In this document: piece after piece, positions 36,022-62,543 of the stretch
How positions within the stretch are numbered: position 1 is the first letter of the stretch
Layout: each line of letters opens with the position of its first letter
DNA from: Mizuhopecten yessoensis
Lineage: Eukaryota
Direction of reading: 5' to 3'
Assembly: GCF_002113885.1 (NCBI RefSeq)
Contig: NW_018408623.1
Coordinates: 369,333 to 433,332, forward strand
DNA length: 64,000 bases
Position numbers and translations under genes: made by a program
Notes under the pieces: model-generated
What the model was told of the DNA's origin: nothing
The model's database searches: none
The model's input: only the letters and a program-made list of their open reading frames with translations

Positions 36022-36035
36022 ATGGCATCGGGAAG
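36022..36035 (+). CDS. receptor A exon 1 (MASG-R)
   Basis: ATG GCA TCG GGA AG|gtaaga; phase 2 matches the next exon; identical coding sequence in copy B. Confidence 0.7.
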
Positions 36036-39000
36036 GTAAGAAGCATATACCATTTTGTAATGTTTAATGCGTTGCAGTCTTGGTAATATTATGCTTGAGT
36101 TAGGATAGGATTTACTCATATAAACTGTCATAACGTTAAAGTCCTAACTAGTTTCGATATACATGTGTAAACTACTATACATGTAGTATCTTGCAAATTC
36201 AGGTGCAATATCAATATAGAAGTATGAATAAATATGGTTTCTTTTTCTTTTTCTAAAAATTATAGATACATCAAAGTCATGGGTTGGCATGAATAACGTT
36301 ATAAATTACTGAAGTATATGTGTGTATTGCGCCAGAATACATATCTAGTCATGCGTGAAGTATGTTTAGTCAATGTTAAACCCTACTCAAGGTAGACTAT
36401 CTATATACAATCAGCAACATTACAATGAAGCGCATTAGCTTTATTTACATTAAGATTAAGTAACAGTATGCAAAAATGAATAACTCTGCATCAAACAGCT
36501 GTTTCCTCCTTCAACGATTCCTCTTTAGTCAATGCTCAGGTCAAAAAGTTTGAAATCCAAATAGGTCTTAACTACTGTTGAAACGGAGGGGAGCTTCAAT
36601 TCCTTTTAATTAATGTATTCAAAAATTAAGAACAATACTAGTCAATTTCAAAATTAACAGTACCATTAAGGAGAGCTGACTCTGATTTGATATCAACATT
36701 ACCAGGGGGAAGTGTCAGATCTATTTACATATCAACATTATCATGGGGGAGTGACATATCTATTTAGATATCAACACCATTATAAGGGGGTGACATATCT
36801 ATTTATATATCAACATAACCATTAGGGGGTGACATATCTATTTAGATATCAACATAACCATTAGGGAGTGACATATCTATTTAGATATCAACATAACCAT
36901 TAGGGGGTGACATATCTATTTAGATATCAACATAACCATTAGGGGGGGACATATCTATTTAGATATCAACATTATCATAGGGGAGTGACATATCTATTTA
37001 GATATCAACACCAGCACGAGGGAGTGACATATCTATTCAGATATCAACATAACCATTAGGGAGTGACATATCTATTAAGATATCAACATAACCATTAGGG
37101 GGTGACATATCTATTTAGATATCAACATTATCATAGGGGAGTGACATATCTATTTAGATATCAACACCAGCACGAGGGAGTGACATATATCTATTCAGAT
37201 ATCAACATTATCATGGGGGAGCGACATATCTATTTAGATATCAACATCACCATGAGGGAGTGTCATATCTATTTAGATATCAACATTACTATGAGGGAGT
37301 GTCAGATCTATGAAGATATCAATATTACCATGAGGGAGTGTCATATCTATTTAGATATCAATATTACCATGAGGGATTGACAGATCTATTTTGATATCAA
37401 CATCACCTTGAGGGAGTGTCAGCTATATCTAGATATCAACTTTACAACAGGGGATTGATAGACTTATTTAGATATCAACGTTATTATGGTAGAATATCAG
37501 ATTTGTTAAGATATCAACATTACCATAAGGGGGTGACATATCTATTTAGATATCAACATAACCATTAGGGAGTGACATATCTATTTAGATATCAACATAA
37601 CCATTAGGAAGTGACAAATCTATTTAGATATCATTATTACTATGAGAGTGTGTCAGATCTATTAAGATATCGACGTTTTCATGCGAGAGTGTCAGATCTA
37701 TGTATATACCAATACAACCATGAGGGAATGTCAAATGTATTACAATATAAACATTACCATGAGAGTGTGTCTGATCTATTTAGATAACAACATTATCATT
37801 GGGGAGTGACATATCTATTTAGATATCAACATAACCATTGGGGAGTGACATATCTTTTTAGATATCGACGTTACCATTAGGGAGTGACATATCTATTTAG
37901 ATATCAACATAACCATTAGGGAGTGACATATCTATTTAGTTATTAACATAACCATTAGGGGGTGACATATCTATTTAGATATCAACATAACTATTAGGGG
38001 GTGACATATCTATTTAGATATACACATAACCATTAGGGAGTGACATATCTATTTAGATATCAACATATCCACGGGGGAGTGTCATATCTATTTAGATATC
38101 AACATCACCATCAGGGAGTGTCATATCTATTAATATATCAACATTATCATTGGGGATTGTCAGATTTGTTTAGATATCAATATTACCATGAGGGAGTGTC
38201 ATATCTATTTAGATATCAACATTACTATGAGGGAGAGTCAGATCTATTAAGATATCAACATTATCATGGATGAGTGTCAGATCTGTTTAGATATCAATAT
38301 TACCATGAGGGATTGACAGATCTATTTTGATATCAACATCACCATGAGGAAGTGTTAGCTATATCTAGATATCAACTTTACAACAGGGGAGTGATAGACT
38401 TATTTAGATATCAACGTTATTATGGTGGAATATCATATTTGTTTAGATATCAACATTACCATAAGGGATTGACAGATCTATTTAGATATCAACATCACCA
38501 TGAAGGAGTGTCAGCTATATCTAGATATCAACTTTAAAACAGGGGAGTGATAGATTTATTTAGATATCAACATTACAATGATTAAATGTCATATCTATTT
38601 TGATATCAACATTGCCATGCGTGAATGTCATATCTATTTAGATATCAACGTTACCATTTGGGAGTGACAGATCTATTTTGATATCAACAATACCGCGGGG
38701 GAGTGTCAGAGCTATTTAGATATCAACAAAACCACGAGGGAGTGATGGATCTATTTAGATATCAACATTTCCATGAGGGGGTATCAGATATATTTAGTTT
38801 TAATATTTCCAAGAGAGAGAGAGAGAGTTAAATCTATTAAGATAACAATATAACCATGAGTGAGTGTCAGATCTATTAAGATATCAATGTTTCATTGAGG
38901 AGTGTTAAATCTATTGAGATATCAACATTACCATGAGAGAGAGAGTTTGGTGTATTTAGATGTCAACATTACCATAGGGAGTGTCATATCTATTGAGATA

Positions 39001-42000
39001 TCAACGTTTCCTTGAGGGAGAGTAATATATCTATCTAGATATCAACATTATCTTGATGGATTTCAACATTACCATAGGGAGTGTCATATCTATTGAGATA
39101 TCAACGTTTCCTTGAGGGAGAGTAATATATCTATCTAGATATCAACATTATCTTGATGGATTTCAACATTACCATAGGGAGTGTCATATCTATTGAGATA
39201 TCAACGTTTCCTTGAGGGAGAGTAATATATCTATCTAGATATCAACATTATCTTGATGGATTTCAACATTACCATAGGGAGTGTCATATCTATTGAGATA
39301 TCAACGTTTCCTTGAGGGAGAGTAATATATCTATCTAGATATCAACATTATCTTGATGGATTTCAACATTACCATAGGGAGTGTCATATCTATTGAGATA
39401 TCAACGTTTCCTTGAGGGAGAGTAATATATCTATCTAGATATCAACATTATCTTGATGGATTTCAACATTACCATAGGGAGTGTCATATCTATTGAGATA
39501 TCAACGTTTCCTTGAGGGAGAGTAATATATCTATCTAGATATCAACATTATCTTGATGGATTTCAACATTACCATAGGGAGTGTCATATCTATTGAGATA
39601 TCAACGTTTCCTTGAGGGAGAGTAATATATCTATCTAGATATCAACATTATATTGATGGATTTCAATATTACCATGGCGGACTGTTAGCATTATTTACAT
39701 ATCAATATTTCAACGAAGGACTGTTAGCTTTAATTAGATATAAATATTACAACGAGGGACAGTTAGTCTTATCTAAATTTCAACATACCCATGTTATTTG
39801 ATCAACTCAAATGTATATACTTTATTCAAATCAAGCAAGTATACGTGGCACTATTCCAACAAACCATTGCATACGTCAATTAAGTCAGGGTAACATTGCC
39901 ATTGTGATCCTGTATGTCGACTTTGAAGATCATTTAGTCAATTTAGAACATCTTCTCCTCAAAATAGTTTCTTTTATCAGTACTTTTGGCTCTTCCACGA
40001 TATACACTCCCTCATACCAAACTACCGGAACGCTTTCGTTCTCTTGTTACGGGAGGTTTCCCCCAATAAAGGTAAACGTCATTATCAATATACAGATGTA
40101 AACAATTTTGTAGCATATTTTGCGAGAAGACAAACGAATACCAAAATGAAATCATTCCAGGATAAAAATGTTAAAAAGGTAAACAACATCTTGGTTGAGT
40201 TTGATGGTAAGATTTCCCAGCACACTGTACACTAAACTGTGCCCTTATATTTTTACTGATTTGTTTTTGTTTTCATATGAGGCTGAATTTACTGTCAAAC
40301 TTTATTGTCTTTTCTATTTCATTCGCTTTTCTCGATCTTTTGACAGAACAAGCAAGGTCGGTTTACTAATGCGGTGTACGATAAGTGGGGGAATTTAATT
40401 TTCCGTTCGTTAACGTTTCCTTTCTTGATAGTACCCTCCATGGTTCCCGAACCTACGGTGTTTAAATGTTGCAGTGTATACGCCATTCACGAGCTTCATC
40501 TAAATATCATGATTTACGTGATATATGTTGACTGCTGGCAGACAAATATACAAGGCGGGATTTCCCAGTATGCAGGTTGATTAAATAATTTAATGGTCAC
40601 CATCACAATTTCATTTGGAAATGTGCTATATCGGTATGTGTCTTTGTTTGATATGGTCGATGGTTTTGAAAATGCGCATAAGTCTATCATGCTATTTTGT
40701 TGTCACTTCTAGCTATAAGGACGTGACATTAGTTGGATTTGACCTCGATTTGTATGACGGGTGACGTCGATGAAGCAGACGATACCGAGTCTTCTCCTTG
40801 TACTTTTTTAAGGGTCACCAAGCAACAGTTTTTTTCTATAGTCTGCCATAGTTTTGTCGATTTCGAGTACATTGTAAAGAACTCTTGTCTAAATTTAATT
40901 TGTTAATGCAGAAAACAAAACTAAGTTTATAATATCTACTGCACTATATAACCATTTCGGTCATGTCTTAAGCATGTATTTGCAATGTGATACCATTCAT
41001 AAATGTCACTGCCGAAATAGAAATGCGTTTAAGGTGATCTACAAATATGTATTCATCACGAAGTAAAACCAAGACACGTCCTTTAACTTCAGAAAATTGT
41101 TTTTTTGCAAGAAGGCATACATCATATTTGGGATAAGATATATGTAATTCTGATGTGGTTATAAAACCTAGTATATAAGTACTTACGATAATAAGCATAC
41201 CTAAGAGTCTTATCTGCTAAATGGTAGAAATCCTTATAGTTTCATGAAGAAATAAAGGAGTCGTTACATCTTAGTGTTTTGTTCGAAATTAGGTACTGCA
41301 TTAATACACTTGTATTTAAAATATCCACAACAAATGGAGAGCGCTATACCAAAAATATTTGTTGGGCTTTTAACATAACACATTCTAAACTGGAATATAT
41401 AACCACATTTAACCGTATAAAATGTAATACTTAAACAGAATCAGTTCGGTGTTAAGCCTTTTTTGAGCATAGCTTGTGACACTTTATCGGCATTTATGTC
41501 TAGATCTTTTTACGATCCTTTAGGCTATTTAGTTTGAACCCCACGCGATTGTGCAAAACAATCAGTTATATGTATCCAAATGTATTTTTCAATCACTAAA
41601 CAATTCACCATTCATAGACAATCTCTCTCACAGAGGCAGGTCAACTACAAAGCGTATCCTCATCTTTATTGAAGTATTCGGCTTTATTTCAGCTTATAAT
41701 ACATTGAATTTAAAATGGCATGTTTCTATATCGATGCGACATCGAGACCGAGAGAACAAGGGGCGAAAATTACATACGAAACAGAATGCTTTGTACGATT
41801 TTCTAACTGAAATCTGATGTCGTGTAGTAGGGCTAAAGTAGAACACCTATATAACACCGGAAATACCGACAAACGGATAACTCGCATGCTGTTGCAGATA
41901 TTTAAACTAAGCATACGCAATACTAGGCATGCTTATGCTGGATAAATAGGAGTATGTGTGTATATGTTATCGAGGTGTAGTTAACTGTTTAATTGTATCT

Positions 42001-45000
42001 ATTTGCACGTTATCAGTATAACCTTATATTCTAGTTGAATCGATATTAAAAGAATTGTTTATTTTGTGTAGGGGGAGGGGAATGGAAGGGAACCAACTAT
42101 CAATTTTATGAAACCTGGTCGATAAAACGTTGGCAAAATACGAAAAGGAAAGAACGACATGGATACCATTGTCTTTGTCAAGGGACAGGTTAAATGTTCT
42201 AAGAAAATTCCCTAAAATGTTAATATGGATGGACTTCCTGTTTGGCGCTTTTGAAATCTAACCAATACCAATCGGAATGTATGCATGCAAGCAATCGTAT
42301 AAGAGACCGGTTTGCCAATTTATGTAAATATGCAGTCATATTTGAAGAATTAGTGAATAAATCAATCTGTCAAAGTCTGACTGTTTGTAATGTTATTAAC
42401 GTTACTTGGTGCGTGGTCATAATCCTGCAATGCTTAGAATGTATTCTGGAAGAATAAATATATCATATATATACATTTTTAAACGTAAGAATTCTAAACT
42501 CTTGCATTCGCAGTTGACAGTTGTTTATCTAACGTAAATTGTAAAGGTTATCAGTAGCAATGATTAATGTAAATAACAAAAACAAATGGTGAGTTGTCAT
42601 TAAGGTTGATAACACACTTAAGGATCCGACTCTTCTCCTGAAAACTGTAACCACCCACAAGGAACTGTTTTTCTGACATGACCATAGCGTTGGTAAATCA
42701 TTTCTGAAAAGAAAGTAACGCTTCATGGGATTTGAGAAATATGTTTCAGTTTTATGAAAAATGAAAATCAGGGGTTGGGGTTTCTGTATATACGTTAAAT
42801 CACAGAGCAATAGGATATAACCCTTAAAAGGTTCTCCCTCATATGACGTTACAGACCAGATGATATTTTTTTGTATGACTTCCAGCACGATCTCTTGTCT
42901 GGGGAACTTTCAAATACACAAAGAACTTAATATTTTACGAAAAGTCTAAAATGTTCCAATTCCAATAAAATACGAAATGATTTAGTTCACGTCTGTCCCC
43001 AAAACGTTTGTAAAGGCTAGTTAAATGATTGAAATAAGGCATATTTGTCCCCGCTCAAGGCTATATCGCTGAAGAGCCTTCACCGATATAATTATTTGGT
43101 AGTCATGTGTTTTATTGACTTTTCCTTCTTGAACAATGTTGTTATGTTTTAAAGAATGATAGAAAAGGATGTTTTACGCATATTTAATCGAGGGGCCTAC
43201 CCTAACGAATTGTTGTAGATGAAAAAGTTATGTTAAGACGCCACTTTTAAACAACAATATAACGTGTATCGAAACAGTAATTCACAAACCTTAATACAAA
43301 CAAATGTCTTGCAAGCAAAAAGAATCACTTTGTAATTTATGAAATTGACGTAAGCAACGCTTATTTTGAAATTCATTTAGTACATTACGGTTGTTTATAA
43401 ATAATGTCACAAGTAATGGACTACGTCATCATATCATTGCCACCACTGATGTTGCCTCAGAAAGAGACCTGGGCTCGAATTCAAACAAAGTTAAGATTAG
43501 ATATTTGTTTATGCTATGATACAACACTAACAAATATTCAAATTTAAAGCATCAAATAACTTTGATTACATGTAACTACAGTATTCAAATAGTAAACCAT
43601 AACGTCTTGCAGCTACTCGGGTAGACGGTTTAATGTAACAGCCCCCTACAATTACAACTGCAATTAGTCACTCGTTGTACATCTGATAAATACATTATTA
43701 GCGCTGTGGACCTTTATGGACGTTGTTTATTAATGTTGATTGCAAAACAAACGAAATAGAAAATAATGTTTGAATAATTATTTTCGTTTAACATATATCA
43801 AAAAAATGTATAGTTGGGCATTTTCGCAGGAGATTTATTTTTGCTATTTCGCAGTCACAAACGAACTAGTGCAGATCGGGAAAAACCACGAAATTAAACA
43901 AATATACAGTAACAGAAGTGATAAGTATCCATGAATACTACTGACACCATTCTGTTATTTTTCAAAACTGCTGCGCTGGACATCCATATTTAAACATAAG
44001 AAAAGTACATAGCTTTATACATCTTCCTCAATTATTATTTTTCAACTAAAAGAATATTCATACCTACTCAGAACATCTTAAAACATAATGATTTAATCCC
44101 CGATTTGACTAAGATTGAAACTGGCTACGAACTTATCATATTTCGACCGAATTTTGGTAAGTAGCTTATTGTGATACTGTGGAATATATTTGAAGGAAAT
44201 CTTTTATAATCATTATACATTAACCCCCTTCTCTCGTCATACTAAAGACGAGAAATGCTTTGTTAATGAATAAGAGACATAGGCATATATGTTTTGATTG
44301 AGGTATGTCGTTGATATGACTTGAGGACAATATCTTTAGATATAAGATAAAACCAAAATCACGTCAACAAGTGTGAGAAGACATAGTTTTGTACCTAAGC
44401 CTTCGTGTGTAAGTATAGTGGGCTCGAACAAACTAGTAGTCTGTGTGACCACAGGTGTATGATATCAATTGCGGTATTACGGCTATGTACGAAATAATTA
44501 TCTACGAATATCGCCTGCTCACCATAAACTACACCTGTTACTTCATAACCAATCTTACATTCAACGGCAAATTTAATCTTCATATTCATACTATAAACTA
44601 ACATCCAGTTTACCAACAAATATCAAAAGCATTTTGCAGGAGAAACATATGTTTTAGCGTATTCTTACTGAATACTATTATTGATAGAATGGGCGTCATG
44701 GATGGTTATCAAATTAAACTGTCCATTGGGCATGAATGTATCACAACAGTCTATCACATTCACTTTGTATCTAAACGAACCACAGCTAGTGCTAGTAGTA
44801 TCAAAAGGTGCACACGTAGTAATTGTATGTTATATTTTTCTTTACAGAATTTTTGTGATTGGTTTCTGGATGTGTCTGTTAACATTTACTGTTCATAGTG
44901 ACTCAAGGCACTTCAGTAAGTATATTTTATATGAAACAGTCGCTTAATTACAAATAATGTTGTTTAATTGTACATGTCATTGGTTTCGTGGTCCATCGCA

Positions 45001-48000
45001 ATTTTTAATACTTATGAATCAATATCAATGATGTTAGCAATCACAAAGCAGTTACTATGCCCTATTTAATGTCGTTATCATACTGTGTATCAGTTATCGC
45101 CAAAAGGTAACGTAAACAATTAACCGTCCATCACTTCAACATATCGGTTACCTTGATTCAATTACCTTACAGCGTTTACATTCCAACTCTTTATTTTTGT
45201 GAATTCCTTAAAATGCGATATAAGAATTCCAACGATTTTCTTGCGAGGATTCAATACGTAAAATGAACAGTATCATATATCCCTTGCTAAAATATTCTCA
45301 CACCATAATATATTTCCTGAAATTAAAGCGATTTACGATATATCTTTTTATCATGTTAAAATGAAATCAGGATAATTTCAGCATTTATTAAATTGATATA
45401 CATTAATGCAATACTAATCTATGGCAGTATCACTTTTATTGACATTAGTTTGCAAAATGTCTTTCATTTTTTCTTTCAAAAGTCACTCCTTTTTACATAA
45501 GATTCCATTTAAATTCCTTAAAATTATGACAACCTATATATTTTTTTTGCGGCAGAAAATTTACATTACTTCAAAGCAATATAACTACAAAATTTGAGGA
45601 AATTCTACTGAGAAATGGGGACACAATCCTATTACCTTAAATAGGCGAGGTCCGTTTATAAAATACATATTTTTAGTATAGAACATCACATTGAATAACA
45701 GTGGTATATTCTTTCATGTCTGAAATGTACACCAGAATCGATTCATTGATATGAAGTTTTTTTTGCTATTATGTAGTTAAGTATTGCTAAATTAAGACGA
45801 TTATTTCATGAGAGATACATTATGTATTATAGTAGTTCGAGTAAACGACATTTCCCCCCTTACATTTGAATTGTTGGCGTGTCATTGTCCAATGAATAGA
45901 GATTCTTGTTTCATTGGTATCGATTTCATATCTTCATAATGCATAATTTAAGTAATATAGTGGTCATATATAGGCTTAGGAAAATATAGTTGATAATAAT
46001 ATCATCTAAATCAAGAAACGTTGATACCTTAAATCATTTTATTGTTATTTTGCCAGATGGGATAACGTTGGAACCTATTATCATTTATTATCATTTTGAC
46101 AGATGGATAGATTTATACCTGTTATCATTTTGTGCTATTTTAACAGATTGGATAGATTTGATACCTATTATCATTTATTATTACTTTGACAGATGGGATA
46201 GAGTTGATATCTGTTATCATTTTGATTTGCTTTGACAGATAGGGAAACGTTGATACCTTTTATCAGTTTCTTATATTTTTACAGATAGGATAACGTTAAT
46301 ACCTGTTAGTATTTTATATTATTTTGCTGGTTTGAATAGCGTTGGAACCAGTTATCATTTTATATTATGTTGACAGCCGGATACTTTTGATACCTATAAA
46401 CATTTTATATCATTGTAACAGATGGGATAACGTTGATACAGTTTTGCAGCTGTTGGAATGCCAGTATTACCCGGACTGGGAACGATTTATATGTAGATAT
46501 AACCTTCGTTAAAAAATGCTGGGAATCACCATTGAAAAAATATGGAGGTTTTCAAATCATCCCTTACAAAAGTACCATGTTATTCAAGATTAGCGTTAAA
46601 GAATCCCTACAGAAGATGTTAAAGGTGAAAGAGTTAAAGTGCCAACTAAATGTAAGTCATACACGTATTTCTCTTCGGCAATTCGTCGTATTTTGTAGAA
46701 GCGTATTTGAAAACATTATCTATTTGCGATCTTCGTATTACTATGTAAATATTCATCGCAATAGAGTAGAATCCGAGAGCTGAGTACGTGACAAATCCTC
46801 GTGATTTAATTGTGACGTTATACGATACGTCATTGATATCAAATATAGGACTACTGTCACTGCATTAACATGCTTATCACTTGCAAGTGTAATACAGAAA
46901 AAAATGTATTATACTAACCTTTGTCACTAAAACAATGGGTAGTACTTATTGAGATATATTCAATTCCTTTTCCATAATTTCTAAATAGCTGTTTCTATTT
47001 GTATTCATATTTTTACAGAAAGGCTGTTTTACTACTATTTCTATGGTGAGAGACACAAGTTTGGAAGTAAGTAATAGATGTTCTAGAGAAGAATATTGAT
47101 AAATGGTGTTTTGTTTATAATGTGAAAATGTGGATTTTCAAGAACTGTCTGTAGCGTTTCAAAGTTTAAATTTCTATATCATTTATAGTTTAAATGCCCA
47201 TCTTATTGTTACAATTGTGAAAAAAGGGAAAACTTTTACTTTTTAATTGTGCCAAATTTAAGGATTCCTGTCCGACTAGTTTTTTTTTATATACACAGTA
47301 ACATCCCCTTAATTCCGTATTGGATATAACTATAGCACAGTTGGGGTGGCACACATCCGTTGACCAGGAACTCAGTGGATTGCAGCGATCGCCTAACATT
47401 GTGAAGTCCAAGGTTCGAATCCTGGTCCAGTCCTGCTGTATATTTACAATCACTATTGATTCAACGTTTTACCGTTCTCTCTTTTGTTTCATGACTTCGC
47501 GCAATCTAAGGTTTCCTTTTCAGAAGTTTTCTTATAAGTCTTCATTTCCATTACTTATATTTGTGTAGTCATTATAGCAGTATATGCATTTATGCTAAAC
47601 AGAACGCAAATAAAATTTGACACTGGTTTTTTTCTCTGAATTTACAGATTATTCCCTTTTGTAACTCTTGTGATAGTTGTATGGGAAAAGAAACAGGTTG
47701 GTATACAATACAATACGTCTGAATTTTAATTAGAAATTATTGAGAAGAATTTATTTACCAACATATACGTTTCAAACTTGAAAGATAAATCCTTATATAT
47801 CAATCAGCGATATGTTACTATTCAACATGCTTTCAAAAATTCTACAATAATGGCTAGCAATCCCTACCAATGCATATCGTTCTAACACTCACTTAGTGAA
47901 AGGAACGACAATTCTGATTAGTGAATGAATGGCCATAACAATGATTTGGTCACGTGAATACCCAATTAGCGATAATATACAGAATTTCAATACATTATAC

Positions 48001-49866
48001 AATTAAAGTTAATTGAAGTACTACATAAATTACTAGAGTGTATGAAAACGATTATTCCAACATTTTACTCCTTAAGAAAATATTCCCACTTGTCATCTCG
48101 ACAATCTGCAGTGACAACATTGTTTTTCAGATTATATCAGCTACACACATCAGAAGAGGAGCCGTGTTCCGGAAGTTGTCACTACTAAACCAAAGAACCC
48201 GCTCGCCCCAGAATCCTACAAATCACGATTTCTGGTCATGGCTGGTGTTGTCACAATTGTTGCTACCATAGCTACATTTGTTATCATCATGTTGGTATGC
48301 CGAATAAACAAAAACAGGATCCAGCGAAGAGGTAATATATTATTTCTCAACACTTGATTACCTTAATAATTATGTTAGAAACATACAGATGATATGAAAA
48401 ACAAAATATATTGTGATTATGATGACATCTGTGTTTTGCTATGTGTTCAATTAGACTGTTGTTTATTTCGTTAAATGTAACAAAATTATAATCAGATCAT
48501 ATGAAAAACAAATATTGTGATCGTGATGACATCGTCGCTATGCGTACAATGAGACATTTTGTAATTTCGTGTGAAGTGTAACAAAGAATATATACAACAA
48601 ATGCAGTTTTTAATGAAAATTAAAACAAAATTAATGGACTTTGAGAAATTATCATGTCCATCTGTAGTTGTAAATAGTGACGCATTAACTGCTTCAATAT
48701 CAATTTACAAATTGATCATTTTCAGGACCTGAACAACAATCGTTAGTGGATGTAGGGAGTGATACCACAGATGCACAAACAGGTAATACGGTTTTAATAT
48801 GCTTATGTAAGGATTGCATAGGACTTTTCCTTTGTTTATATTTTTGCTTAATTTTCATCGATTTAGAATTCGAATTACGTATTTGTAATAAATAAAAACA
48901 CAACTAAACTGAAACAGAAAAAATAGTCACCTACATTAGTTCTTAAACTTTCTACTAACTAAATGTAAACAAAAACAACAACAAAACCATAATCCGAGCT
49001 TCATCTCGATCAAATACAAGGATTTTCACGTCCTGACATCGAGAACACTGGTAGTGACAACATAACCACAAAGCACACAAGCACACAAGTGATAACAAAC
49101 ATTTTATAAGCACCAATGGTTTAAGATTCACTTTCTTATTGAGATAAAGTTCGATGCACAAATGTGTTTCATTTTTTTTATAGATGTTTCCATACCTATC
49201 GAACCAAACAGTCCTACAGAACAACCCAACACACGAATTCGAAGGCAGTCCGTGAAAATTGGTGTTTTCCACCCTCATATTCCGAAGGAGTTATCTTCTC
49301 AAGCGACCGAAAACCCTTTGGACGCACATGTGCAACGTATGATAAATATCCTTACTTCTGTACAAGAATTAGACGTTAATTATTTAACAACGAATTTAAC
49401 CAATCTATTTGAAGGGATTGATGAAGTGAGCTCTTCGCCAAAGATAATTCTTGTTCTTTGCGATAGGTTTAGTGAACTCTGCCACGAAGGAAGTGCTCAG
49501 AACGGGAATATTACCGAAGAGAAATGGACAGATACTGAAAGTAATCTTTTGAAAAGAATAAGAGAAAAATATTACCTAAATAATACTTGTTTGTATTTTG
49601 TAAATTTCAAACATTTTAAACAACAGAACAACGCCCTTGCTGATGCTCGAGTTATGTTTACTAGCCAGTCGTATAAGGTGTTCAGTATTGACTATTTGGG
49701 TCAAAGTGACGACCACTTCAAACAGCTTTTGGATTCAATTTTGTCTGATGTCATCTGTGACTCTGAAGCACGGAGCATACGAATCATGTCGCTTTTAAGT
49801 CAAGATTTGAACACAATTCATGTCAGTGATGCAATTGAACAGAGATTTATGTCGTTGTGCGAGTAG
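36022..49866 (+). CDS. IL-17-receptor-like type I membrane protein with SEFIR/TIR-like tail, copy A, spliced model 449 aa
   Basis: join(36022-36035,44848-44915,46422-46651,47019-47066,47648-47696,48131-48331,48726-48782,49184-49866) = 1350 nt, GT-AG, phases 2,1,0,0,1,1,1. Signal peptide MASGRIFVIGFWMCLLTFTVHS; ectodomain ending LEIIPFCNSCDSC; TM FLVMAGVVTIVATIATFVIIMLVC followed by RINKNR; cytoplasmic beta/alpha pattern. Family call is motif-based inference. Confidence 0.75.
36655..39795. repeat. ~39-bp minisatellite, copy A, in receptor intron 1
   Basis: Unit ~gatatcaacataaccattagggagtgacatatctattta; explains ORFs 37102-38537. Confidence 0.95.
38963..39670. repeat. 100-bp higher-order repeat, 7 near-identical copies
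   Basis: tcaacattaccatagggagtg recurs every 100 bp from 38963 to 39563. Confidence 0.95.
39960..40870 (+). mobile_element. decayed Penelope-like reverse transcriptase relic (copy A)
   Basis: Fragments CP.IFTDLFLFSYEAEF, FLDL, YDK...FPFL, YGV match the CAPLLADLFLYSYE / KLYDKRDDFNFPIVNFPFL type; many stops and frameshifts. Confidence 0.75.
44848..44915 (+). CDS. receptor A exon 2 (signal peptide IFVIGFWMCLLTFTVHS-DSRHF)
   Basis: tttacag|A ... TTC A|gtaagt; 68 nt; conserved in copy B. Confidence 0.85.
46016..46440. repeat. ~44-bp minisatellite built from the exon 3 acceptor and exon start (copy A, ~10 units)
   Basis: ttttgacag|atgggataacgttgatacc repeated; the last unit is the modelled acceptor. 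Confidence 0.9.
46422..46651 (+). CDS. receptor A exon 3 (GITLIQFCSCWNAS...KCQLN)
   Basis: taacag|AT ... AAT|gtaagt; 230 nt. Confidence 0.85.
47019..47066 (+). CDS. receptor A exon 4 (KGCFTTISMVRDTSLE)
   Basis: ttttacag|AAA ... GAA|gtaagt; 48 nt, phase 0-0. Confidence 0.8.
47362..47432 (+). mobile_element. tRNA-derived SINE head relic (copy A)
   Basis: A-box-like gaactcagtgg and B-box ggttcgaatcc; no intact cloverleaf. Confidence 0.6.
47648..47696 (+). CDS. receptor A exon 5 (IIPFCNSCDSCMGKET)
   Basis: tttacag|ATT ... ACA G|gttggt; 49 nt, phase 0-1. Confidence 0.8.
48131..48331 (+). CDS. receptor A exon 6 (stalk and TM helix)
   Basis: ttttcag|AT ... AGA G|gtaata; 201 nt; 24-residue hydrophobic helix then basic residues; different frame from the listed ORF. 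Confidence 0.87.
48726..48782 (+). CDS. receptor A exon 7 (GPEQQSLVDVGSDTTDAQT)
   Basis: ttttcag|GA ... ACA G|gtaata; 57 nt, phase 1-1. Confidence 0.7.
49184..49866 (+). CDS. receptor A exon 8, SEFIR/TIR-like cytoplasmic domain
   Basis: tttatag|AT; longest ORF in the window; VKIGVFH / HVQRMINIL / LDVNYL / KIILVLCDRF / LYFVNF / YKVF / FKQLLDSI. Confidence 0.85.
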
Positions 49867-50734
49867 TAAATGAAAGGTACATCTTCAAGGTTTCCTTACA
49901 TCAACGAGCTCTGGCAAAACTTTGTGTTGAAATCTCAAAAGACGTGAGTGTTTCAGAATATAAACACGTACATTGTATCACGTGCTTTGTCATGTTGAAT
50001 TTGAGGTTTTATCTTAGCACGAGAAACGCGAAAATGACACTGCAGATGAAATCATATTTCATGTACTACCAAAATGTCTGTGAAAGATTTACTGTTTGTG
50101 ATATTGTTGATCTCTTCATTATTTATTTTCACAGTAATTTAATGACGATATTTTGAAATCGCTTTATAAACAATACAAGTTGTTTTTATATATATTTGAT
50201 AATTGAAAATAATAAATAATCATGTGAAGTATGTAAGTGAAGAAATGATAAGATAGAACGACAGACTTAAAACTAGCAGCTGTCACCCATCAAACTGATC
50301 TTCAGAAACAAACTTAAAGAGCCCTGTGAAGGGTGAAAGCTACTAGTGCTTTGTTGGTCGTTATATCTTAATTTCTGTATTTAATAATGTGTCCCGATAT
50401 AATTAAAAAAACACGAAGAACTTTGCACTTGTAAATGTAATTAAGAACAGGAGATTCGAGCACTTTATGTATTTGGACGACTTCCTCAGGAGGTGAAAGT
50501 CCAGGTGAACTACTGGTGCTCAAATACTATTTCTTGTAAAGAGAACGTATATGAACTTCACGTTTATCGATATTATTGATATATATGTATGTTAATACGA
50601 TACATATATATTTACCATCGCATGGGGCTAACTAATGGCCATCAGGATTAATATCAAATATTGTTTCTATACATCACTAAGATGTTAAGGGACAAAAGGT
50701 TTAATAAAATTATACCAATTTTATCAGATACACT

Positions 50735-51560: not shown

Positions 51561-51574
51561 ATGGCATCGGGAAG
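51561..51574 (+). CDS. receptor B exon 1 (MASG-R)
   Basis: ATG GCA TCG GGA AG|gtaata. Confidence 0.65.
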
Positions 51575-51974
51575 GTAATAAGCATGTACCATTTTGTGAT
51601 AATTTATGTATTGCAGTATTGATATTAATGTGCTTGCGTTAAGATTTAATTTACTCATATAATGTCATAATATTAGGGTCCTAACTAGTTTCTATATAAA
51701 GGTGTAAATTGCATGACGTACTTTACCATATCAATATAGATGGATGAATTATCAGATTTTTCTTAAAACTGAAAATATATCAAAGTCATGGGTTGGCATG
51801 AATAACGTTATCAATTATTGAAGCATATATGTGTATTGCGCAACAATACAAATCTAGTCATGCATGAAGTATGTTTAGTCAATGTTAAACCCTATTCAAG
51901 GTAAACTATCAATATACAATATACAATGAGCAACATGACAATGAAGTGCATTTGCTATATATACATATCAGCAT

Positions 51975-54900
51975 GTCTAAGAGGGAGCGTTATCTCTATT
52001 AAGATACCAATATTACAACGATAAAATGTTAGCGCTATTTAGATTCAAACATTACCACGAGGGAGTGTTTGCTCTATTTATATACTAGCATGACATGAGG
52101 ACACGATACCTCTATTTAGATATATGAACGTAACGTACAAAGTTGTGATAGAACCTTTAAAATTTAGTTATAGAAAAAGTATGCCAATATCACATATCAA
52201 CATAACCATTAAGGACTGTAAGCTCTATTCACATATCAACATAACCATTAAGGACAGTAAACTCTATCCACATATCAACATAACCATTAAGGACTGTAAG
52301 CTCTATTCACATATCAACATAACCATGAGGGACCGTTAGCTTTATTTATGTATCAACATAACCATGAGAGACCGTTAGCTTTATTTACATATCAACATAA
52401 CCATGAGGGACTGTTAGATATATTTACATATCAACATAACCATGAGGGACCGTTAGCTTAATTTGTATATCATCATAACCATTGAGGACCGTAAGCTCTA
52501 TTTACATATCAACATAACCATGAGGGACCGTTAGCTTTATTTATGTATCAACATAACCATGAGAGACCGTTAGCTTTATTTACATATCAACATAACCATG
52601 AGGGACTGTTAGATATATTTACATATTAACATAACCATGAGGGACCGTTAGCTTTATTTATATATCGACATAACCATGTGGGACCGTTAGCTTTAGCTAT
52701 ATATCAACAGAACCACGAGGGACCGTAAGCTTTATTTAGATATCGACATAACCATGAAGGATCGTTAGCTTTATTTACATATCAACATAACCATGAGGGA
52801 CTGTTAACCTTATTTACATATCAACATAACCATGAGGGACCGTTAGCTTTATTTATGTATCAACATAACCATGAGGGACCGTTAGCCCTATTTACATATC
52901 AACATAACCATGAGGGACTGTTAGATATATTTACATATCAACATAACCATGAGGGACCGTTAGCTCAATTTGTATATCATCATAACCAGTGAGGACCGTG
53001 AGCTCAATTTATATATCAACACAACCGTGAGGGACCGTTAACTTTTTTTATATACCAACATAACCATGAGGGACCATTAGCTTTATTTATACATCAACAT
53101 AACCATGAGGGACCATTAGCTTTATTAATATATCAACATAACAATGAGGGACCGTTAACTTTATTTATCTATCAACATAACCATGAGGGACCGTTAACTT
53201 TATTTATATCAACATAACCATGAGGGACTGTTAACCTTATTTACATATCAACATAACCATGAGGGACCGTTAACTTTATTTATATATCACCATAACCACG
53301 AGGGACTGTTAGCTTTATTTATATATCAACATAACCATGAGGGACCGTTAACTTTATTAACATATCAACATAACCATGAGGGACCGTTAACTTTATTTAT
53401 ATATCAACATAACCATGAGGGACCGTTAGCTCTATTTATATATCAACATAGCCATGAGGGACCGTTAGCTCTATTTATATATCAACATAACCATGAGGGA
53501 CCGTTAGCTCAATTTGTATATCATCATAACCATTGAGGACCGTAAGCTCTATTTATATATCAACACAACCGTGAGGGACCGTTAACTTTTTTTATATATC
53601 AACATAACCATGAGGTACCGTTAACTTTATTTATATATCAGCATAAACATGAGGGACCGTTAACTTTATTTATATATCAACATAACCATGAGGGACCGTT
53701 AGCTCTATTTATATATCAACATAGCCATGAGGGACCGTTAGCTCTATTTATATATCAACATAACCATGTGGGACCATTAACTTTATTTATATATCAACAT
53801 AACCATGAGGGACCGTTAACTTTATTTATATATCAACATAACCATGAGGGACCGTTAACTTTATTTATATATCAACATAACCATGAGGGACCGTTAACTT
53901 TATTTATATATCAACATAACCATGAGGGACCGTTAACTTTATTTATATATCAACATAACCATGAGGGACCGTTAACTTTATTTATATATCAACATAACCA
54001 TGAGGGACCGTTAACTTTATTTATATATCAACATAACCATGAGGGACCGTTAACTTTATTTATATATCAACATAACCATGAGGGACCGTTAACTTTATTT
54101 ATATATCAACATAACCATGAGGGACCGTTAACTTTATTTATATATCAACATAACCATGAGGGACCGTTAACTTTATTTATATATCAACATAACCATGAGG
54201 GACTGTTTACTTTATTTATATATCAACATAACCATGTGTGACCATTAACTTTATTTATATATCAACATAACCATGAGGGACTGTTAGCTCTATTTATATA
54301 TCAACATAGCCATGAGGGACCATTAGCTTTATTTATATATCAACATAACCATGTGGGACCATTAACTTTATTTATATATCAACATAACCATGAGGGACCG
54401 TTAACTTTATTCATATATCAACATAACCATGAGGGACTGTTAGCTCTATTTATATATCAACATAACCATGAGGAACCGTTAACTTTATTTATATATCAAC
54501 ATACCCATGAGGGACTGTTTACTTTATTTATATATCAACATAACCATGAGGGACTGTTAGCTCTATTTATATATCAACATAACCATGAGGAACCGTTAAC
54601 TTTATTTATATATCAACATAACCATGAGGGACCGTTAACTCTATTTATATATCAACATAACCATGAGGGACCGTTAACTTTATTTATATATCAACATAAC
54701 CATAGGGGCCGTTAACTTTATTTATATATCAACATAACCATGTGGGACCATTAACTCTATTTATATATCAACATAACCATGAGGGACCGTTAACTTTATT
54801 TATATATCAACATAACCATGAGGGACCGTTAGCTCTATTTATATATCAACATAACCATGAGGGACCATTAGCTTTATTAATATATCAACATAACCATGAG

Positions 54901-55318
54901 GGACTGTTTACTTTATTTATCTATCAACATAACCATGAGGGCCGTTAACTTTATTTATATATCAACATAACCACGAGGGACCTTTTACTTTATTTATCTT
55001 TCAACATAACCATGAGGGACCATTAGCTTTATTTATACATCAACATAACCATGAGGGACCGTTAACTTTATTTACATATCATCTTAACCATGAAGGACCT
55101 TTCACTTTATTTACATATCAACAATATCATGACGGAGAGTAAACTTTATTTATATATTAACATTACTATGAGGGATTATTATGATATCAACATTATCATG
55201 TAGAAGAGGGAGAGTTATTTACATATCAACAATACCGTGACGGACTGTAAGCTCTATTTACATATCAGAGCTACCATGAGGGACTGTTAGCCTTATTCTA
55301 ATTTCAACATAACCATGA
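51975..55318. repeat. 39-bp minisatellite, copy B
   Basis: Unit tatcaacataaccatgagggaccgttaactttatttata; explains the YQHNHEGPLTLFI ORFs. Confidence 0.96.
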
Positions 55319-55449
55319 TGCTTGATCGACTCAATTGTATATATTTTATTCAAATTAAGCAAGTATGCCTGGTACAACTCTAATAAAGCATTGTCTACGT
55401 CAATTAAGTCAGGGTAGCATTTACATTGTGTCCCTCAATTTTTTGTTTT

Positions 55450-56110
55450 TCTTTTATCAGTACTTTTGGCTTTTTCCCTATATACACTCCCTCATACCAC
55501 ACTACAGGAACGCCTTCGTTCTCTTGTTACGGGAGGTTTTCCACCAATAAAGGTGAACGTCATTATAAATAAACAATTTTTGTAGGAGATCTTGTGAGAA
55601 GAACAAGGAATATCAGAATGAATTAATTCCAGGAGAAATATTTTACAATGGTTAACAATATATCTTGGCTGAGTTTGATGGTAAGATTTCCACTGTACAC
55701 ATTCATAAACTGTGCCCTTATTCTTGCTGATTTGTTTTTTGTTTTCCTATGAGGCTATCGAACTATATTGTCTCTTCTACTTCAGGCGCTTATTGTGATT
55801 TTCAATTTCTTGACAAGCAGAAACAGCCTACTATTAAGCTGTACGATAAGCGGGGTGATGGTAATTTTCCTTTCGTGAACGTTTCCTTTCTTGATAGTAA
55901 CATCCATGATTCCCGAACCTACGGTGTTTAAATGTTGCAGTGTATACGCCATTCACAAGCTTCATCTAAATATCATGATTTACGTGATATATGTTGACTG
56001 CTGGCGGACAAATATACAAGGCGGGATTTACAAATATGCACGTTGATGATACTATACATAATTGCATGGTCACCATCACGATCTCATTGGGATTTATGAT
56101 ATATCTTTGT
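55450..56110 (+). mobile_element. decayed Penelope-like RT relic (copy B)
   Basis: NCALILADLF, KLYDKRGDGNFPFVNVSFLDSNI, YGV. Confidence 0.75.
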
Positions 56111-57829
56111 GTGTCTTAACCTCCTAAGTTTCAGAAAAAAATGTTTTTGCGAGAAGGCATACACCATATTTAGGATAAAAATAAACGTAATGCTGATGTT
56201 GTATAAAACCTAGTATATAACTACTGATGATTATTTTGATACTAATAGAGTCTTATCTGTTAAATGGTAGAAATACTTTTTCATGAAATATGAAGGAGTG
56301 TTTTGTGCGATGTTATAAACTGGATTAATACACAAATTAACAATTTGTTCTTCCCCAATTTGGGAGCACTGTACTGAAAATATCTGTTGGACTTGTAGCA
56401 TAACACATGCTAAACTGAAATGTTTAACCAAATCTTACCGTACAAAATGTAATGCTTAACAAAGAAACAGTTAGCTGTTAAGCCTTTTTTAAACATAGCC
56501 TGAGACACTCGTTTTACGATCCTTTACGCTATTTAATGGAAACCTCACGCGATTGTGCAAAATAATCAGTTATTAGTATCCAAATTATGTTTAAATCACG
56601 AAACAATTAACCATTTATAGACAACCTCTATCACAGAGGCAGACCAACTACAAAGCATATCAATGTCTTATCTTTATAGGTTGATCACATGTCAGCCTAT
56701 AAAATAATGAATTCAAAATGGCATGTTTCTTTATCGATGCGGAAATCGAGACAGAGAAACATGAGACCAACATTTACATACGAAGCAGAATGCTTTGTTC
56801 AATTTTCAGAGAAATTCATAATTAATAAGAGATTTCTAACTTAGACCTTGTGTCGTTCAGTAGGGCTAAAGTAGGACGCCTACCTAACCCCGGAAAAACC
56901 AAAAAGGGATAAATCGCATGCTGTTGCAGATATTTGTTGGGCTTTACAATTGTATTAACACAGAGATGTCAGCAATTGACTTATTGGGATAAAATATGTA
57001 ATCTTTAAATATGGAAATTGATATTCCCACACGCCCTGCAGGTTAGTACAAATTTTATTCCGGTACACGTGTACTGAAACTCAACATACGCAAAACTAGG
57101 CATGCTTTGACTTGATACATAAGAGTACTTATTTATATGTTATCGTGGTGTAGTTAACTGTTAAATTATATTTATTTGCACGCAATCAGTGTAACCTTAT
57201 ATTGTAGACAAAATGCCAACCAAATTTGTCTTAAGAATCGTGTTGATAAAAGGGTGTTGCATTTATTATGTGTATATAAGTATATATCAGGCGATATTTA
57301 AAGTGCTTGTGTACCCAAAAAACAACACTGATGTTCTAGAGCAGAAATAACAATTGTATGAAGCATTTTAGCAACCATATGTAGAAACTTTTTAGCGAAT
57401 TTTGAGACGCCTTCAATAACATCAAGGGGACAATGAAATGAGCAACACCAATTTTACCAGTAAAACATGCGAAACATCCACTAATTTCATTAAGAGTATA
57501 TATAACATCATCGATTGGTACTATGCTTGAATTTATAAAAAAAATGCCTGGGAAGGGGAGGGCACCAATTATCACCCTTATGCCCAATTATCCATAAAAC
57601 TTGGGCAAAATATGATTAAGGAAAGATTAGCATGGACACCATGACCTTTACCAAGGGTTGCGTCGAATCTACAGGTAATTTGTTCCAAGCAAATTCCCTA
57701 AAATGTCATTTTGAACGGGTTTCTTCTTTTGCGCTTTTGAGAGCTGACCAATGCCATTGGAATGTATGCATATAAGCAATTGTACTCTAGAACGATATGC
57801 CAACTTTTATGTAAACTAGATTGGTGATT

Positions 57830-57888
57830 GTCGATTACTGGACTACAAATTGTGCTTCTAGCGCTTTAATCAACTGAACTACCTGGTC
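57830..57888 (-). mobile_element. tRNA-derived SINE head relic
   Basis: Minus strand gaccaggtagttcagttgattaaagcg, similar to the heads at 47362 and 63340. Confidence 0.45.
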
Positions 57889-59971: not shown

Positions 59972-60039
59972 AATGTTAGTGATTGGTTTCTGGATGTGTC
60001 TGGTAACATTCACTGTTCATGGTGACACAAGGCACTTCA
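59972..60039 (+). CDS. receptor B exon 2 (MLVIGFWMCLVTFTVHG-DTRHF)
   Basis: tttacag|A ... A|gtaagt; 68 nt. Confidence 0.75.
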
Positions 60040-61858: not shown

Positions 61859-62069
61859 GTTTTGCAGCTGTTGGAATGCCAGTATTACCCGGACTGGGAA
61901 CGATTTATATGTAGATATATCCTTCTTTAAAAATTGCTGGGAATCACCATTGAAAAATCCTGGAGGTTTTCAAATCATCCCTTACGAAAGTACCATGTTA
62001 TTCAAGATTGGCGTTAAAGAATCCCTACGGAAGATGTTAAGGGTGAAAGAGTTAAAGTGCCAGCTAAAT
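61840..62069 (+). CDS. receptor B exon 3
   Basis: ttaacag|AT ... AAT|gtaagt; 230 nt, open. Confidence 0.75.
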
Positions 62070-62457: not shown

Positions 62458-62505
62458 AAAGGTTGTTTTACTATTATTTCTATGGTGAGCGACACAAGTT
62501 TGGAA
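62458..62505 (+). CDS. receptor B exon 4 (KGCFTIISMVSDTSLE)
   Basis: ttcacag|AAA ... GAA|gtaagt; 48 nt. Confidence 0.72.
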
Positions 62506-62543
62506 GTAAGTAATATGTGTTCTAGAGAAGAATATTGATAAAT

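What the first reader, a model, noticed from the sequence alone, without database searches (positions are those of the whole stretch)
36022..49866. Minimal IL-17R-like receptor: one short ectodomain plus a divergent SEFIR/TIR-like domain
Seen: signal peptide (1-22), 147-aa ectodomain with 8 Cys, TM helix (170-193) and a cytoplasmic alternating beta/alpha domain. LEIIPFCNSCDSC resembles the membrane-proximal FN3 end of IL-17RA (VQIQPFFSSCLNDC). KIILVLC, LYFVNF and FKQLLDSI occupy SEFIR-like positions, but the usual F-I-S-Y-S and Trp marks are missing. Established: IL-17 receptors normally have at least two FN3-like domains. Inference: a half-size, fast-evolving receptor or co-receptor family. 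Its 14-57 nt micro-exons make it easy for annotation to miss.
Basis: partly seen in the sequence, partly recalled or inferred. Interest (0 to 1): 0.8.

Follow-up and report, generated by a model that had tools for sequence, protein, structure and literature searches.

The report
Scallop-only receptor with hidden TIR/SEFIR domain
This is a real, weakly expressed scallop gene for a small membrane receptor whose outer part is predicted to be a single fibronectin-like domain and whose inner part is predicted to have the TIR/SEFIR fold used in innate-immune signalling, but no sequence test shows that it descends from interleukin-17 receptors.

Summary

**Support for the model**
- An Argopecten RefSeq protein and an intronless transcript contig show the same one-ectodomain layout.
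- Ectodomain exons are conserved in Pecten and Ylistrum.
- One RNA run has sparse reads over exons 4-8.
- Exon 1 has no RNA support.

**Distribution.** The family appears scallop-restricted: four clusters among 1.8 billion representatives. The genome holds a tandem near-copy (B) and an older paralogue (C) with no detectable signalling domain.

**Family tests**
- Sequence methods (Pfam, PDB profile, hhalign against SEFIR and TIR sets) find nothing significant.
- The ectodomain model (pLDDT 82) is a generic FN3-like sandwich. IL-17RA ranks 2-3 in Foldseek but is not singled out by VIA-align.

**Verdict.** A lineage-specific receptor with one FN3-like domain and a STIR-fold domain hidden from sequence searches. 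Descent from IL-17R is possible but unproven. The scan had not reported it on other DNA.

The parts
36022..36035 (+).
   Evidence: Frame joins exon 2. The 14 nt plus donor are identical in paralogue B at 51561-51574, with about 100 nt of well-conserved upstream sequence. No RNA evidence (one search did not cover it).
44848..44915 (+). Copy A exon 2: hydrophobic core of the signal peptide
   Evidence: Homologous exon in B (59972-60039) and in P. maximus (L009:6434-6499). In A, codon 2 is ATT where the others have ATG. No reads.
46422..46651 (+). Copy A exon 3: main part of the ectodomain (FCSCW, CW and C-x-L-N motifs; 4 of the 8 Cys)
   Evidence: 46-70% identical to the corresponding exon or segment in three scallop genera, and 32-36% to P0004; Cys and Trp invariant. 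The acceptor lies in the last unit of a 46-bp minisatellite.
47019..47066 (+). Copy A exon 4 (48 nt), ectodomain strand
   Evidence: RNA depth 0.28 in X24.
47648..47696 (+). Copy A exon 5 (49 nt): IIPFCNSCDSC, membrane-proximal Cys cluster
   Evidence: The P-x-C-x2-C-x2-C motif is conserved in all orthologues and in paralogue C. RNA depth 0.57 in X24.
48131..48331 (+). Copy A exon 6: stalk, TM helix (aa 169-193) and basic stop-transfer stretch
   Evidence: RNA depth 0.3-1.2 in X24.
48726..48782 (+). Copy A exon 7 (57 nt), juxtamembrane linker
   Evidence: Two X24 reads join exon 6 to exon 7, but with the paralogue-B form of the exon. A similar segment is present in the P. maximus RefSeq protein and absent from the Ylistrum model.
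49184..49866 (+). Copy A exon 8: 227-aa cytoplasmic part holding the STIR-like (TIR/SEFIR-fold) domain; stop codon at 49864-49866
   Evidence: AlphaFold pLDDT 79.8, pTM 0.77. Best structural matches are TIR and SEFIR. RNA depth 1-3.6 in X24.
49867..50400 (+). 3'UTR (runs on beyond 50400)
   Evidence: X24 reads at depth 0.5-2.5 up to the end of the stretch laid, and 5 reads run over its ends.
51561..63754 (+). Paralogue B, exons 1-5 (51561-51574, 59972-60039, 61840-62069, 62458-62505, 63706-63754); exons 6-8 lie beyond the window. TGA at 63736-63738 replaces the last ectodomain Cys.
   Evidence: B-specific letters appear in X24 reads.
46017..46439 (+). 46-bp minisatellite made of repeated copies of the exon-3 acceptor (TTTTGACAG|ATGGGAT)

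Best explanation
The locus encodes a scallop-restricted type I membrane receptor. A signal peptide is followed by one FN3-like beta-sandwich of about 120 aa held by eight conserved cysteines, a short stalk, one TM helix, and a cytoplasmic domain of about 170 aa. That domain is predicted to adopt the STIR fold (the TIR/SEFIR superfamily), although its sequence has drifted beyond recognition.

Inferred mechanism, modelled on IL-17R/ACT1 and TLR/MyD88 assemblies:
- Ligand binding clusters the ectodomains.
- The clustered cytoplasmic domains nucleate a homotypic STIR-STIR assembly with an adaptor, either a SEFIR adaptor such as CIKS/ACT1 or a TIR adaptor such as MyD88. Both kinds of domain are present in this genome.
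- That assembly feeds NF-kB-type signalling.

The gene sits in a small cluster: A, a recent tandem copy B, and an older paralogue C that keeps the ectodomain and TM helix but has no detectable STIR domain. This fits a receptor plus co-receptor or decoy set.

Shown: the gene structure, its conservation, low-level transcription, and the two predicted folds. Inferred: ligand binding, oligomerisation, the adaptor and the pathway. Whether the domain descends from SEFIR or from TIR is unresolved.
For: - The gene model is open and canonical.
- The orthologous full-length protein P0005 and the intronless transcript ORF P0004 have the same layout.
- The ectodomain exons are conserved in P. maximus and Y. 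balloti.
- X24 reads lie on exons 4-8.
- Cytoplasmic model: pLDDT 79.8, pTM 0.77, five strands alternating with helices.
- In the ESM Atlas shape search, 5 of 10 rows are SEFIR families, including a molluscan IL-17R cluster with TMq 0.59 over 182 aa.
- Every named hit shown in the language-model feature search is TIR_2 or SEFIR, but at weak scores.
- Thirty-eight invariant residues across six sequences, many of them in the predicted strands and helices.
- The genome holds canonical SEFIR and TIR genes that could supply partners.
Against: - No sequence-level support. Pfam finds no TIR or SEFIR hit even at E<=10. The PDB profile search finds nothing. hhalign gives probabilities of 0.2-1.5% against scallop and mollusc SEFIR and TLR-TIR alignments.
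- Both models come from shallow alignments (6 and 9 rows). Only the best of five models reaches about 80 pLDDT; the others score 42-67 and 47-77.
- Foldseek against PDB gives no hit at E<=0.001 for either domain.
- Expression is very low in the four runs sampled, and the 5' exons of copy A have no reads.
- dN/dS between A and B is at or above 1 in both domains, and B carries a stop codon. One copy may be decaying.
Confidence: 0.65

Rival explanations
1. The reader's reading, a sub-case of the best explanation. The family is a shrunken IL-17 receptor: its single ectodomain is the membrane-proximal D2 FN3 domain, and its cytoplasmic domain is a degenerate SEFIR that still recruits a CIKS/ACT1-type adaptor, perhaps as a co-receptor for the expanded bivalve IL-17 cytokines.
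For: - Both domains independently bring up IL-17R. IL-17RA chains 4hsa_C and 3jvf_C rank 2-3 of 350,542 chains for the ectodomain, with the joint-highest TMq (0.51-0.52) and the lowest rmsd (3.5 A) among the ten best-ranked matches; the VIA-align alignments of IL-17RA chains fall on D2, residues 179/194-305.
- SEFIR structures give the longest alignments to the cytoplasmic model (152-153 aa in PDB, 182 aa to a molluscan IL-17R cluster) and the best Foldseek TM-scores.
- The model has a short helix plus a low-confidence loop inserted between strand C and the long helix C, and only four residues between strand B and helix B. A long CC' insertion is named as a SEFIR mark in PMC4014126. The absence of a BB loop is a SEFIR trait from my own knowledge.
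- The whole domain lies in the last exon, as the SEFIR does in L003, L004 and L007.
- IILVLC resembles the strand-C motif YIIVLC of the scallop IL-17RD-like SEFIR. It is the only stretch hhalign paired.
- Bivalve IL-17Rs vary widely in ectodomain size (PMC8353272).
Against: - The SEFIR Pfam model and a 49-sequence mollusc SEFIR profile give no significant match.
- No separate helix B' appears in the model.
- The W-x3-E and F/W-x2-LL motifs look TIR-like.
- The Cys motif differs in spacing from the IL-17RA motif, which I know only from memory.
Confidence: 0.35
2. Also a sub-case of the best explanation. The cytoplasmic domain descends from a TIR domain, making the protein a SIGIRR- or IL-1R-accessory-like receptor with one small ectodomain. 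It may keep the catalytic-type glutamate, and so act as a scaffold for MyD88-type adaptors or as an NAD-cleaving TIR.
For: - The non-significant hhalign alignment to scallop TLR TIRs runs over 138 columns in the right order. It pairs W114/E118 with the TIR helix-C WCxxE and HFxxLL with box 3 FWxxL. E118 is invariant.
- TIR genes are far more numerous than SEFIR genes in this genome: at least 39 against 6 exons.
- There is a weak Pfam hit to a nucleoside 2-deoxyribosyltransferase family, a TIR-like fold.
Against: - There is no Pfam TIR or TIR_2 hit.
- Box 1 and the box 2 Pro-Gly BB loop are absent.
- A 14-residue insertion follows strand C.
- The Atlas shape search favours SEFIR families.
- The hhalign probability is only 1.5%.
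Confidence: 0.3
3. The cytoplasmic domain is a generic flavodoxin-like or nucleotide-hydrolase-like fold, or the model is an artefact of a shallow alignment. In that case the protein is an adhesion or orphan membrane protein unrelated to STIR signalling.
For: - No sequence test is significant.
- Foldseek E-values are all above 0.001, and flavodoxins head the E-value order.
- Four of the five AlphaFold models have pLDDT of 67 or less.
Against: - TIR and SEFIR fill all top ten places of an exhaustive structural search and stand 3-4 Z units above generic flavodoxin and GTPase rows.
- An independent Atlas shape search and a language-model search both point to the same superfamily.
- A position directly behind a TM helix in a type I protein is typical of STIR receptors.
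Confidence: 0.15

Closest known systems
IL-17 receptor family (IL-17RA to RE; bivalve IL-17Rs)
   Same: - Type I topology.
- FN3-like membrane-proximal domain with a Cys cluster just before the stalk.
- The cytoplasmic STIR-fold domain is encoded in the last exon.
- The model has an insertion between strand C and helix C, and has no BB loop.
- IL-17RA and ACT1 SEFIR are among the three best structural matches.
   Different: - One ectodomain domain instead of two or more.
- No Pfam SEFIR or IL17R_fnIII hit, and no profile-profile signal.
- No helix B' in the model.
- A TIR-like W-x3-E motif.
- Ligand and adaptor are unknown.
IL-1R-family TIR receptors with small ectodomains (IL-1RAcP, IL-1RAPL, SIGIRR)
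   Different: - The ectodomain here is FN3-like with eight Cys, not an Ig domain.
- TIR boxes 1 and 2 are absent.
- There is an insertion after strand C.
- No sequence similarity was detected.
Molluscan 'IL-17RD-like' SEFIR proteins (P0007, P0060; mussel IL17R-C in PMC8353272)
   Same: They are lineage-specific bivalve membrane proteins with a reduced extracellular part and a STIR-superfamily domain behind the TM helix.
   Different: - They have a canonical SEFIR (96-106 bits for the three scanned) and almost no ectodomain, about 36 aa with no signal peptide.
- They are conserved across Mollusca.
- The present family has an ectodomain, a cryptic domain, and is found only in scallops.
Class II cytokine receptor D2 / FN3 domains (IFN-gamma R1, IL-10R, IL-20R2)
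   Different: - Those receptors have two such domains and signal through JAK-binding tails.
- There is no sequence similarity.

Membership tests
IL-17 receptor family | Cytoplasmic SEFIR domain recognisable by sequence (Pfam PF08357) | tested here: not met
   There is no hit at E<=10 for the window protein or any of the 5 relatives. The genome-wide SEFIR scan finds 6 other exons but not this locus. hhalign against 4 scallop SEFIRs gives probability 0.2%, and against 49 mollusc and scallop SEFIRs 0.7%.
IL-17 receptor family | SEFIR-type structure: five-stranded parallel sheet, long CC' insertion between strand C and helix C (PMC4014126); no BB loop (own knowledge) | tested here: inconclusive
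IL-17 receptor family | Short rigid helix B' between strand B and helix B (PMC4014126) | tested here: not met
   The DSSP string of the model goes from strand 62-66 straight to helix 71-82. This comes from a model of moderate confidence.
IL-17 receptor family | Ectodomain of two or more FN3-like domains (IL17R_fnIII_D1 and D2) | tested here: not met
   There is a single domain of about 120 aa in the window model and in full-length P0005 and P0004. Pfam gives no hit on the ectodomains. The D2 model also fails to find the canonical scallop receptors exon by exon, so that particular blank is uninformative.
IL-17 receptor family | Specific structural likeness of the ectodomain to IL-17R D2 | tested here: inconclusive
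IL-17 receptor family | Binds IL-17 cystine-knot cytokines and recruits ACT1/CIKS | not testable with these tools
   This needs binding and signalling assays.
TIR domain family | Sequence match to Pfam TIR or TIR_2; boxes 1-3 | tested here: not met
   There is no Pfam hit, and hhalign against 11 scallop TLR TIRs gives probability 1.5%. The box 1 (YDAFxSY) and box 2 (RDxxPG) motifs are absent from the alignment. Only a box-3-like F/W-x2-LL is present.
TIR domain family | TIR fold | tested here: met
TIR domain family | Helix-C W-x3-E with the conserved (in NADase TIRs, catalytic) glutamate | tested here: inconclusive
   W114 is present in 5 of 6 sequences and E118 is invariant, at the start of helix 109-131. 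They pair with the TIR WCxxE only in a non-significant hhalign alignment. No structural superposition was available.
FN3-like / cytokine-receptor beta-sandwich | Seven-stranded beta-sandwich | tested here: met
   The model of the Argopecten orthologue's ectodomain has pLDDT 82, pTM 0.74 and seven strands. FN3 and cytokine-receptor D2 domains dominate both searches, together with a few unrelated beta-sandwich domains. The window's own ectodomain was not folded, because it is split over four exons.

The most novel reading that the evidence does not exclude
Scallops evolved a private cytokine-receptor module from an IL-17 receptor. It kept only the D2-like FN3 domain and remodelled the SEFIR into a sequence-orphan STIR domain that combines a SEFIR-type CC' insertion with a TIR-type W-x3-E helix. 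The module consists of a signalling receptor (A, and perhaps B) and a STIR-less partner or decoy (C) in one syntenic cluster. If so, it would be an unrecognised branch of the STIR superfamily that Pfam-based surveys of bivalve immunity cannot see.
Probability: 0.3. Interest if true: 0.55.

Novelty: new variant of a known kind. Interest (0 to 1): 0.4.

Why it matters
Surveys of bivalve innate immunity count IL-17 receptors and TIR proteins by Pfam hits (for example PMC8353272). This family shows that such surveys can miss receptors whose signalling domain is visible only as a fold.

If the STIR assignment holds, scallops have an extra, lineage-specific receptor cluster: two near-identical copies and a tail-less paralogue. 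Such a cluster might pair with their expanded IL-17-like cytokines or with another ligand.

It also gives a test case for how far a TIR/SEFIR domain can drift while keeping its fold. It is a practical annotation fix as well, because three RefSeq models of this gene are truncated or fused to transposon-like sequence. It does not open a long-standing question.

Tried and rejected
**Searches that found nothing**
- Pfam on every exon and on all family members found only chance hits.
- PDB sequence searches with the cytoplasmic profile, the ectodomain profile and the P0004 ectodomain found only chance hits.
- hhalign of the family against scallop SEFIRs, a 49-sequence mollusc SEFIR set and 11 scallop TLR TIRs gave probabilities of 1.5% or less.
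- The family profile, searched against the window's own genome, found only copies A and B.
- A word search with the ectodomain found only Argopecten isoforms.
- The language-model search on the ectodomain gave no usable hit, and the Atlas's own low-confidence model matched only generic sandwiches.
- A paper search for the RefSeq identifiers found nothing. An earlier-findings search by words also found nothing.

**Attempts that failed technically**
- PF16578 (IL17R D2) against the genome found nothing above cut-off anywhere, so it cannot be used as a test here.
- I tried to add exon 4 and exon 5 fragments to the ectodomain alignment. MAFFT misplaced them, so the fold used alignment A4 without them.
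- I tried to read the juxtamembrane Cys motif of canonical scallop IL-17R genes from genomic DNA upstream of L004 and L007. The exons were too fragmented to interpret.
- I looked for exon 1 in Pecten and Ylistrum by DNA similarity and found nothing significant.

**Ideas rejected**
- Extra ectodomain exons hidden in introns 1-2: the orthologous transcript and the RefSeq protein are contiguous from signal peptide to domain.
- Paralogue C carrying the same tail: tblastn found no match in 20 kb downstream, and its orthologues are only 254-255 aa.

Full report
**What is there**

The window is AT-rich eukaryotic DNA, about 33% GC. The assembly has 987.6 Mb in 82,659 contigs, and every relative of the gene is from Pectinidae. 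From my own knowledge, that size and contig count fit the Yesso scallop assembly. This is an inference.

Eight + strand exons, all with GT-AG introns, give an uninterrupted frame of 449 aa:
- 36022-36035
- 44848-44915
- 46422-46651
- 47019-47066
- 47648-47696
- 48131-48331
- 48726-48782
- 49184-49866

The protein has a hydrophobic N-terminus (residues 1-22), eight Cys between residues 23 and 168, a TM segment at 169-193 followed by basic residues, and a 227-aa last exon.

The joined model was assembled only inside scripts, from window coordinates. I used it there for translation, residue counts and local tblastn against loci already fetched. It was never sent to a database or fold tool. Searches used single exons by reference. 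The ectodomain fold was run on an orthologue, and the whole-protein fold was left out.

**Is the model real?**

Orthologues give independent support:
- An exhaustive phmmer search of the last exon against 1.84 billion cluster representatives found only four clusters.
- The four clusters are Ylistrum balloti (280 aa), Pecten maximus (312 aa), Argopecten irradians (357 and 443 aa) and a 495-aa ORF from a public run's assembly.
- The 443-aa Argopecten protein and the 495-aa ORF have the same order as the window model: signal peptide, one Cys-rich domain, TM, conserved tail.
- The 495-aa ORF lies uninterrupted on a 1967-nt contig, so that contig is a transcript.
- The shorter Pecten and Ylistrum RefSeq models begin at the Met inside exon 5. 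The missing exons lie upstream in their genomes: exons 2-5 in Pecten and exons 3-5 in Ylistrum.

So the small exons are indeed being missed by annotation, and no second ectodomain is hidden in the long introns.

RNA from this species is sparse. Of four RNA-seq runs, only X24 has reads on the gene, at depth 0.3-3.6 over exons 4-8 and the 3'UTR. The four variant positions in those reads are exactly the A-to-B differences. The two reads that join exon 6 to exon 7 carry B's form of exon 7. Both copies are therefore transcribed at a low level.

Exons 1-3 of copy A have no reads. Three points argue for exon 1:
- Its 14 coding bases and donor are identical in A and B, behind a conserved upstream block.
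- The Argopecten model also has a short first coding exon, with an Arg at the position that corresponds to the exon 1/2 junction of copy A; its exon boundaries themselves were not examined.
- Copy A has ATT where B, Pecten and Argopecten have an ATG at codon 2 of exon 2, so A needs the upstream ATG.

**Genomic setting**

Copy B is a tandem duplicate about 15.5 kb downstream. It is 95% identical to A in the tail and 85% in the ectodomain, and carries TGA in place of the last ectodomain Cys at 63736-63738.

About 7 kb beyond B lies an older paralogue, C. It has the same ectodomain Cys pattern and a TM exon, but no matching tail within 20 kb. Its Pecten and Ylistrum orthologues are only 254-255 aa.

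dN/dS between A and B is 2.6 over 107 ectodomain codons, 0.7 in the TM exon and 1.3 in the tail. The counts are small and were not tested for significance. They fit either diversifying selection on the ectodomain or decay of B.

**The cytoplasmic domain**

Sequence methods are blind to it:
- Pfam finds no TIR or SEFIR hit at E<=10 for any of six family members.
- The PDB profile search finds nothing.
- The Pfam SEFIR model finds six other exons in this genome but not this one.
- hhalign gives 0.2-0.7% against SEFIR alignments and 1.5% against scallop TLR TIRs.

AlphaFold2, using the six-sequence alignment, gave a best model with pLDDT 79.8 and pTM 0.77. It has five strands alternating with helices.

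Structural searches with that model:
- Foldseek against PDB gave no E<=0.001. Flavodoxin-like folds head the list, and the highest TM-scores belong to SEFIR entries.
- Chain 9ot1_E is ACT1 SEFIR. Its length and residue range match the construct in PMC12828022.
- Generic flavodoxins and GTPases scored about 8.
- In the ESM Atlas shape search, five of ten rows are SEFIR families. They include IL-17RB, CIKS and a molluscan IL-17R cluster with TMq 0.59 over 182 aa.
- A language-model feature search returned only TIR_2 or SEFIR among named hits, at weak scores.

I take the STIR (TIR/SEFIR) fold as likely, at about 0.8. Two caveats apply: the alignment is shallow, and four of the five models were poor.

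**SEFIR or TIR?**

For SEFIR:
- Longer structural alignments and the Atlas result.
- A short helix plus a flexible loop between strand C and the long helix C. This is the CC' insertion that PMC4014126 names as a SEFIR mark.
- A four-residue link between strand B and helix B, so no BB loop.
- The IILVLC strand, which resembles YIIVLC of the scallop IL-17RD-like SEFIR.
- The domain lies whole in the last exon.

For TIR:
- The best Z and the lowest rmsd.
- W114-x3-E118 at the start of helix C, with E118 invariant, like the TIR WCxxE.
- A box-3-like F/W-x2-LL motif.
- No separate helix B' in the model.

None of this is decisive, so I leave the lineage open.

**The ectodomain**

There are no sequence relatives outside the family. 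The model of the Argopecten ectodomain has pLDDT 82, pTM 0.74 and seven strands. It is an FN3-like sandwich.

The two domains each bringing up IL-17R is suggestive, but it is not a demonstration.

All eight Cys are conserved across the family and in paralogue C. The motif before the stalk is P-x-C-x2-C-x2-C. Its likeness to the end of IL-17RA D2 is short, and I could not test it with a tool-supplied IL-17RA sequence.

**How it most likely works**

By analogy with the IL-17RA/RB/ACT1 and TIR filaments (PMC12828022), ligand-driven clustering of the ectodomains would bring the STIR domains together. They would then seed a homotypic assembly with a SEFIR or TIR adaptor. The genome encodes both kinds. 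Paralogue C would act as a partner or decoy without a signalling domain. All of this is inference.

**Comparison and novelty**

Bivalve IL-17 receptors are known to vary in ectodomain size, and one conserved molluscan SEFIR group has no ectodomain at all (PMC8353272). A reduced receptor is therefore not surprising in itself.

What is new is a scallop-restricted family, annotated only as uncharacterised, whose two domains can be assigned only by predicted structure. I file it as a new variant of a known kind (STIR-domain receptors), not as a member of the IL-17R family. The sequence-level SEFIR test and the two-domain ectodomain test both failed.

Interest is moderate. Neither my near-place nor my word look-up in the scan's earlier notes showed this family noted on other DNA.

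Noticed in passing
window 46017-46439 (copy A) and 61162-61850 (copy B): A 46-bp minisatellite, 9 copies in A and 15 in B. Each unit is a pyrimidine tract plus TTTTGACAG|ATGGGAT, that is, a repeated copy of the exon-3 acceptor and first codons. The used acceptor is the last unit, so the array offers many in-register cryptic acceptors.
   Followed up: partly
window 63736-63738: Paralogue B has TGA where A and all orthologues have the last ectodomain Cys (TGT). B is nevertheless transcribed, since B-specific letters and B's exon 7 form appear in X24 reads.
   Followed up: partly
G000:C5296 about 442137-445300 (outside the window; L012, L014, L019): A third, older paralogue C has the same ectodomain Cys pattern (FCSCW, CW, P-x-C-x2-C-x2-C) and a TM exon, but no detectable STIR tail. 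It is conserved next to the gene in Pecten and Ylistrum as 254-255-aa products.
   Followed up: partly
window 44851-44853: Copy A has ATT at codon 2 of exon 2, where copy B, Pecten and Argopecten have ATG. Copy A alone therefore depends on the ATG of the 14-nt exon 1.
   Followed up: yes
window 45374-45640: All four RNA runs place reads here that fit only partly and continue into unrelated sequence. This is an expressed repeat or transposon fragment inside intron 2, not an exon of this gene.
   Followed up: no
window 36685-39675 and 52194-55175: Large 39-bp minisatellites (60 and 77 copies) and a 100-bp repeat lie in intron 1 of copies A and B.
   Followed up: no
window 3639-4076 and 7451-7912: These ORF pieces look like the N-terminal part of an SLC26 sulfate transporter (my own reading; Pfam gave no hit on the fragments). 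In P. maximus the gene upstream of the orthologue carries Sulfate_transp and STAS domains, so synteny seems conserved.
   Followed up: partly
P0006 (Argopecten irradians isoform X2), residues 225-435: In this RefSeq isoform the STIR-like tail is replaced by an unrelated sequence that resembles a transposon recombinase N-terminal region (my own reading; no Pfam hit). It is probably an annotation artefact.
   Followed up: partly
P0007, P0060 (molluscan 'IL-17RD-like'); L003: This conserved molluscan group of SEFIR proteins has only about 36 extracellular residues, no signal peptide, a TM helix and a canonical SEFIR. It is a SEFIR membrane protein without an ectodomain.
   Followed up: partly
window 12001-14000 and 29492-30127: The first region has strong GC skew (+0.41) and AT skew (-0.47). 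The second is a perfect short tandem repeat that produces long artificial ORFs.
   Followed up: no
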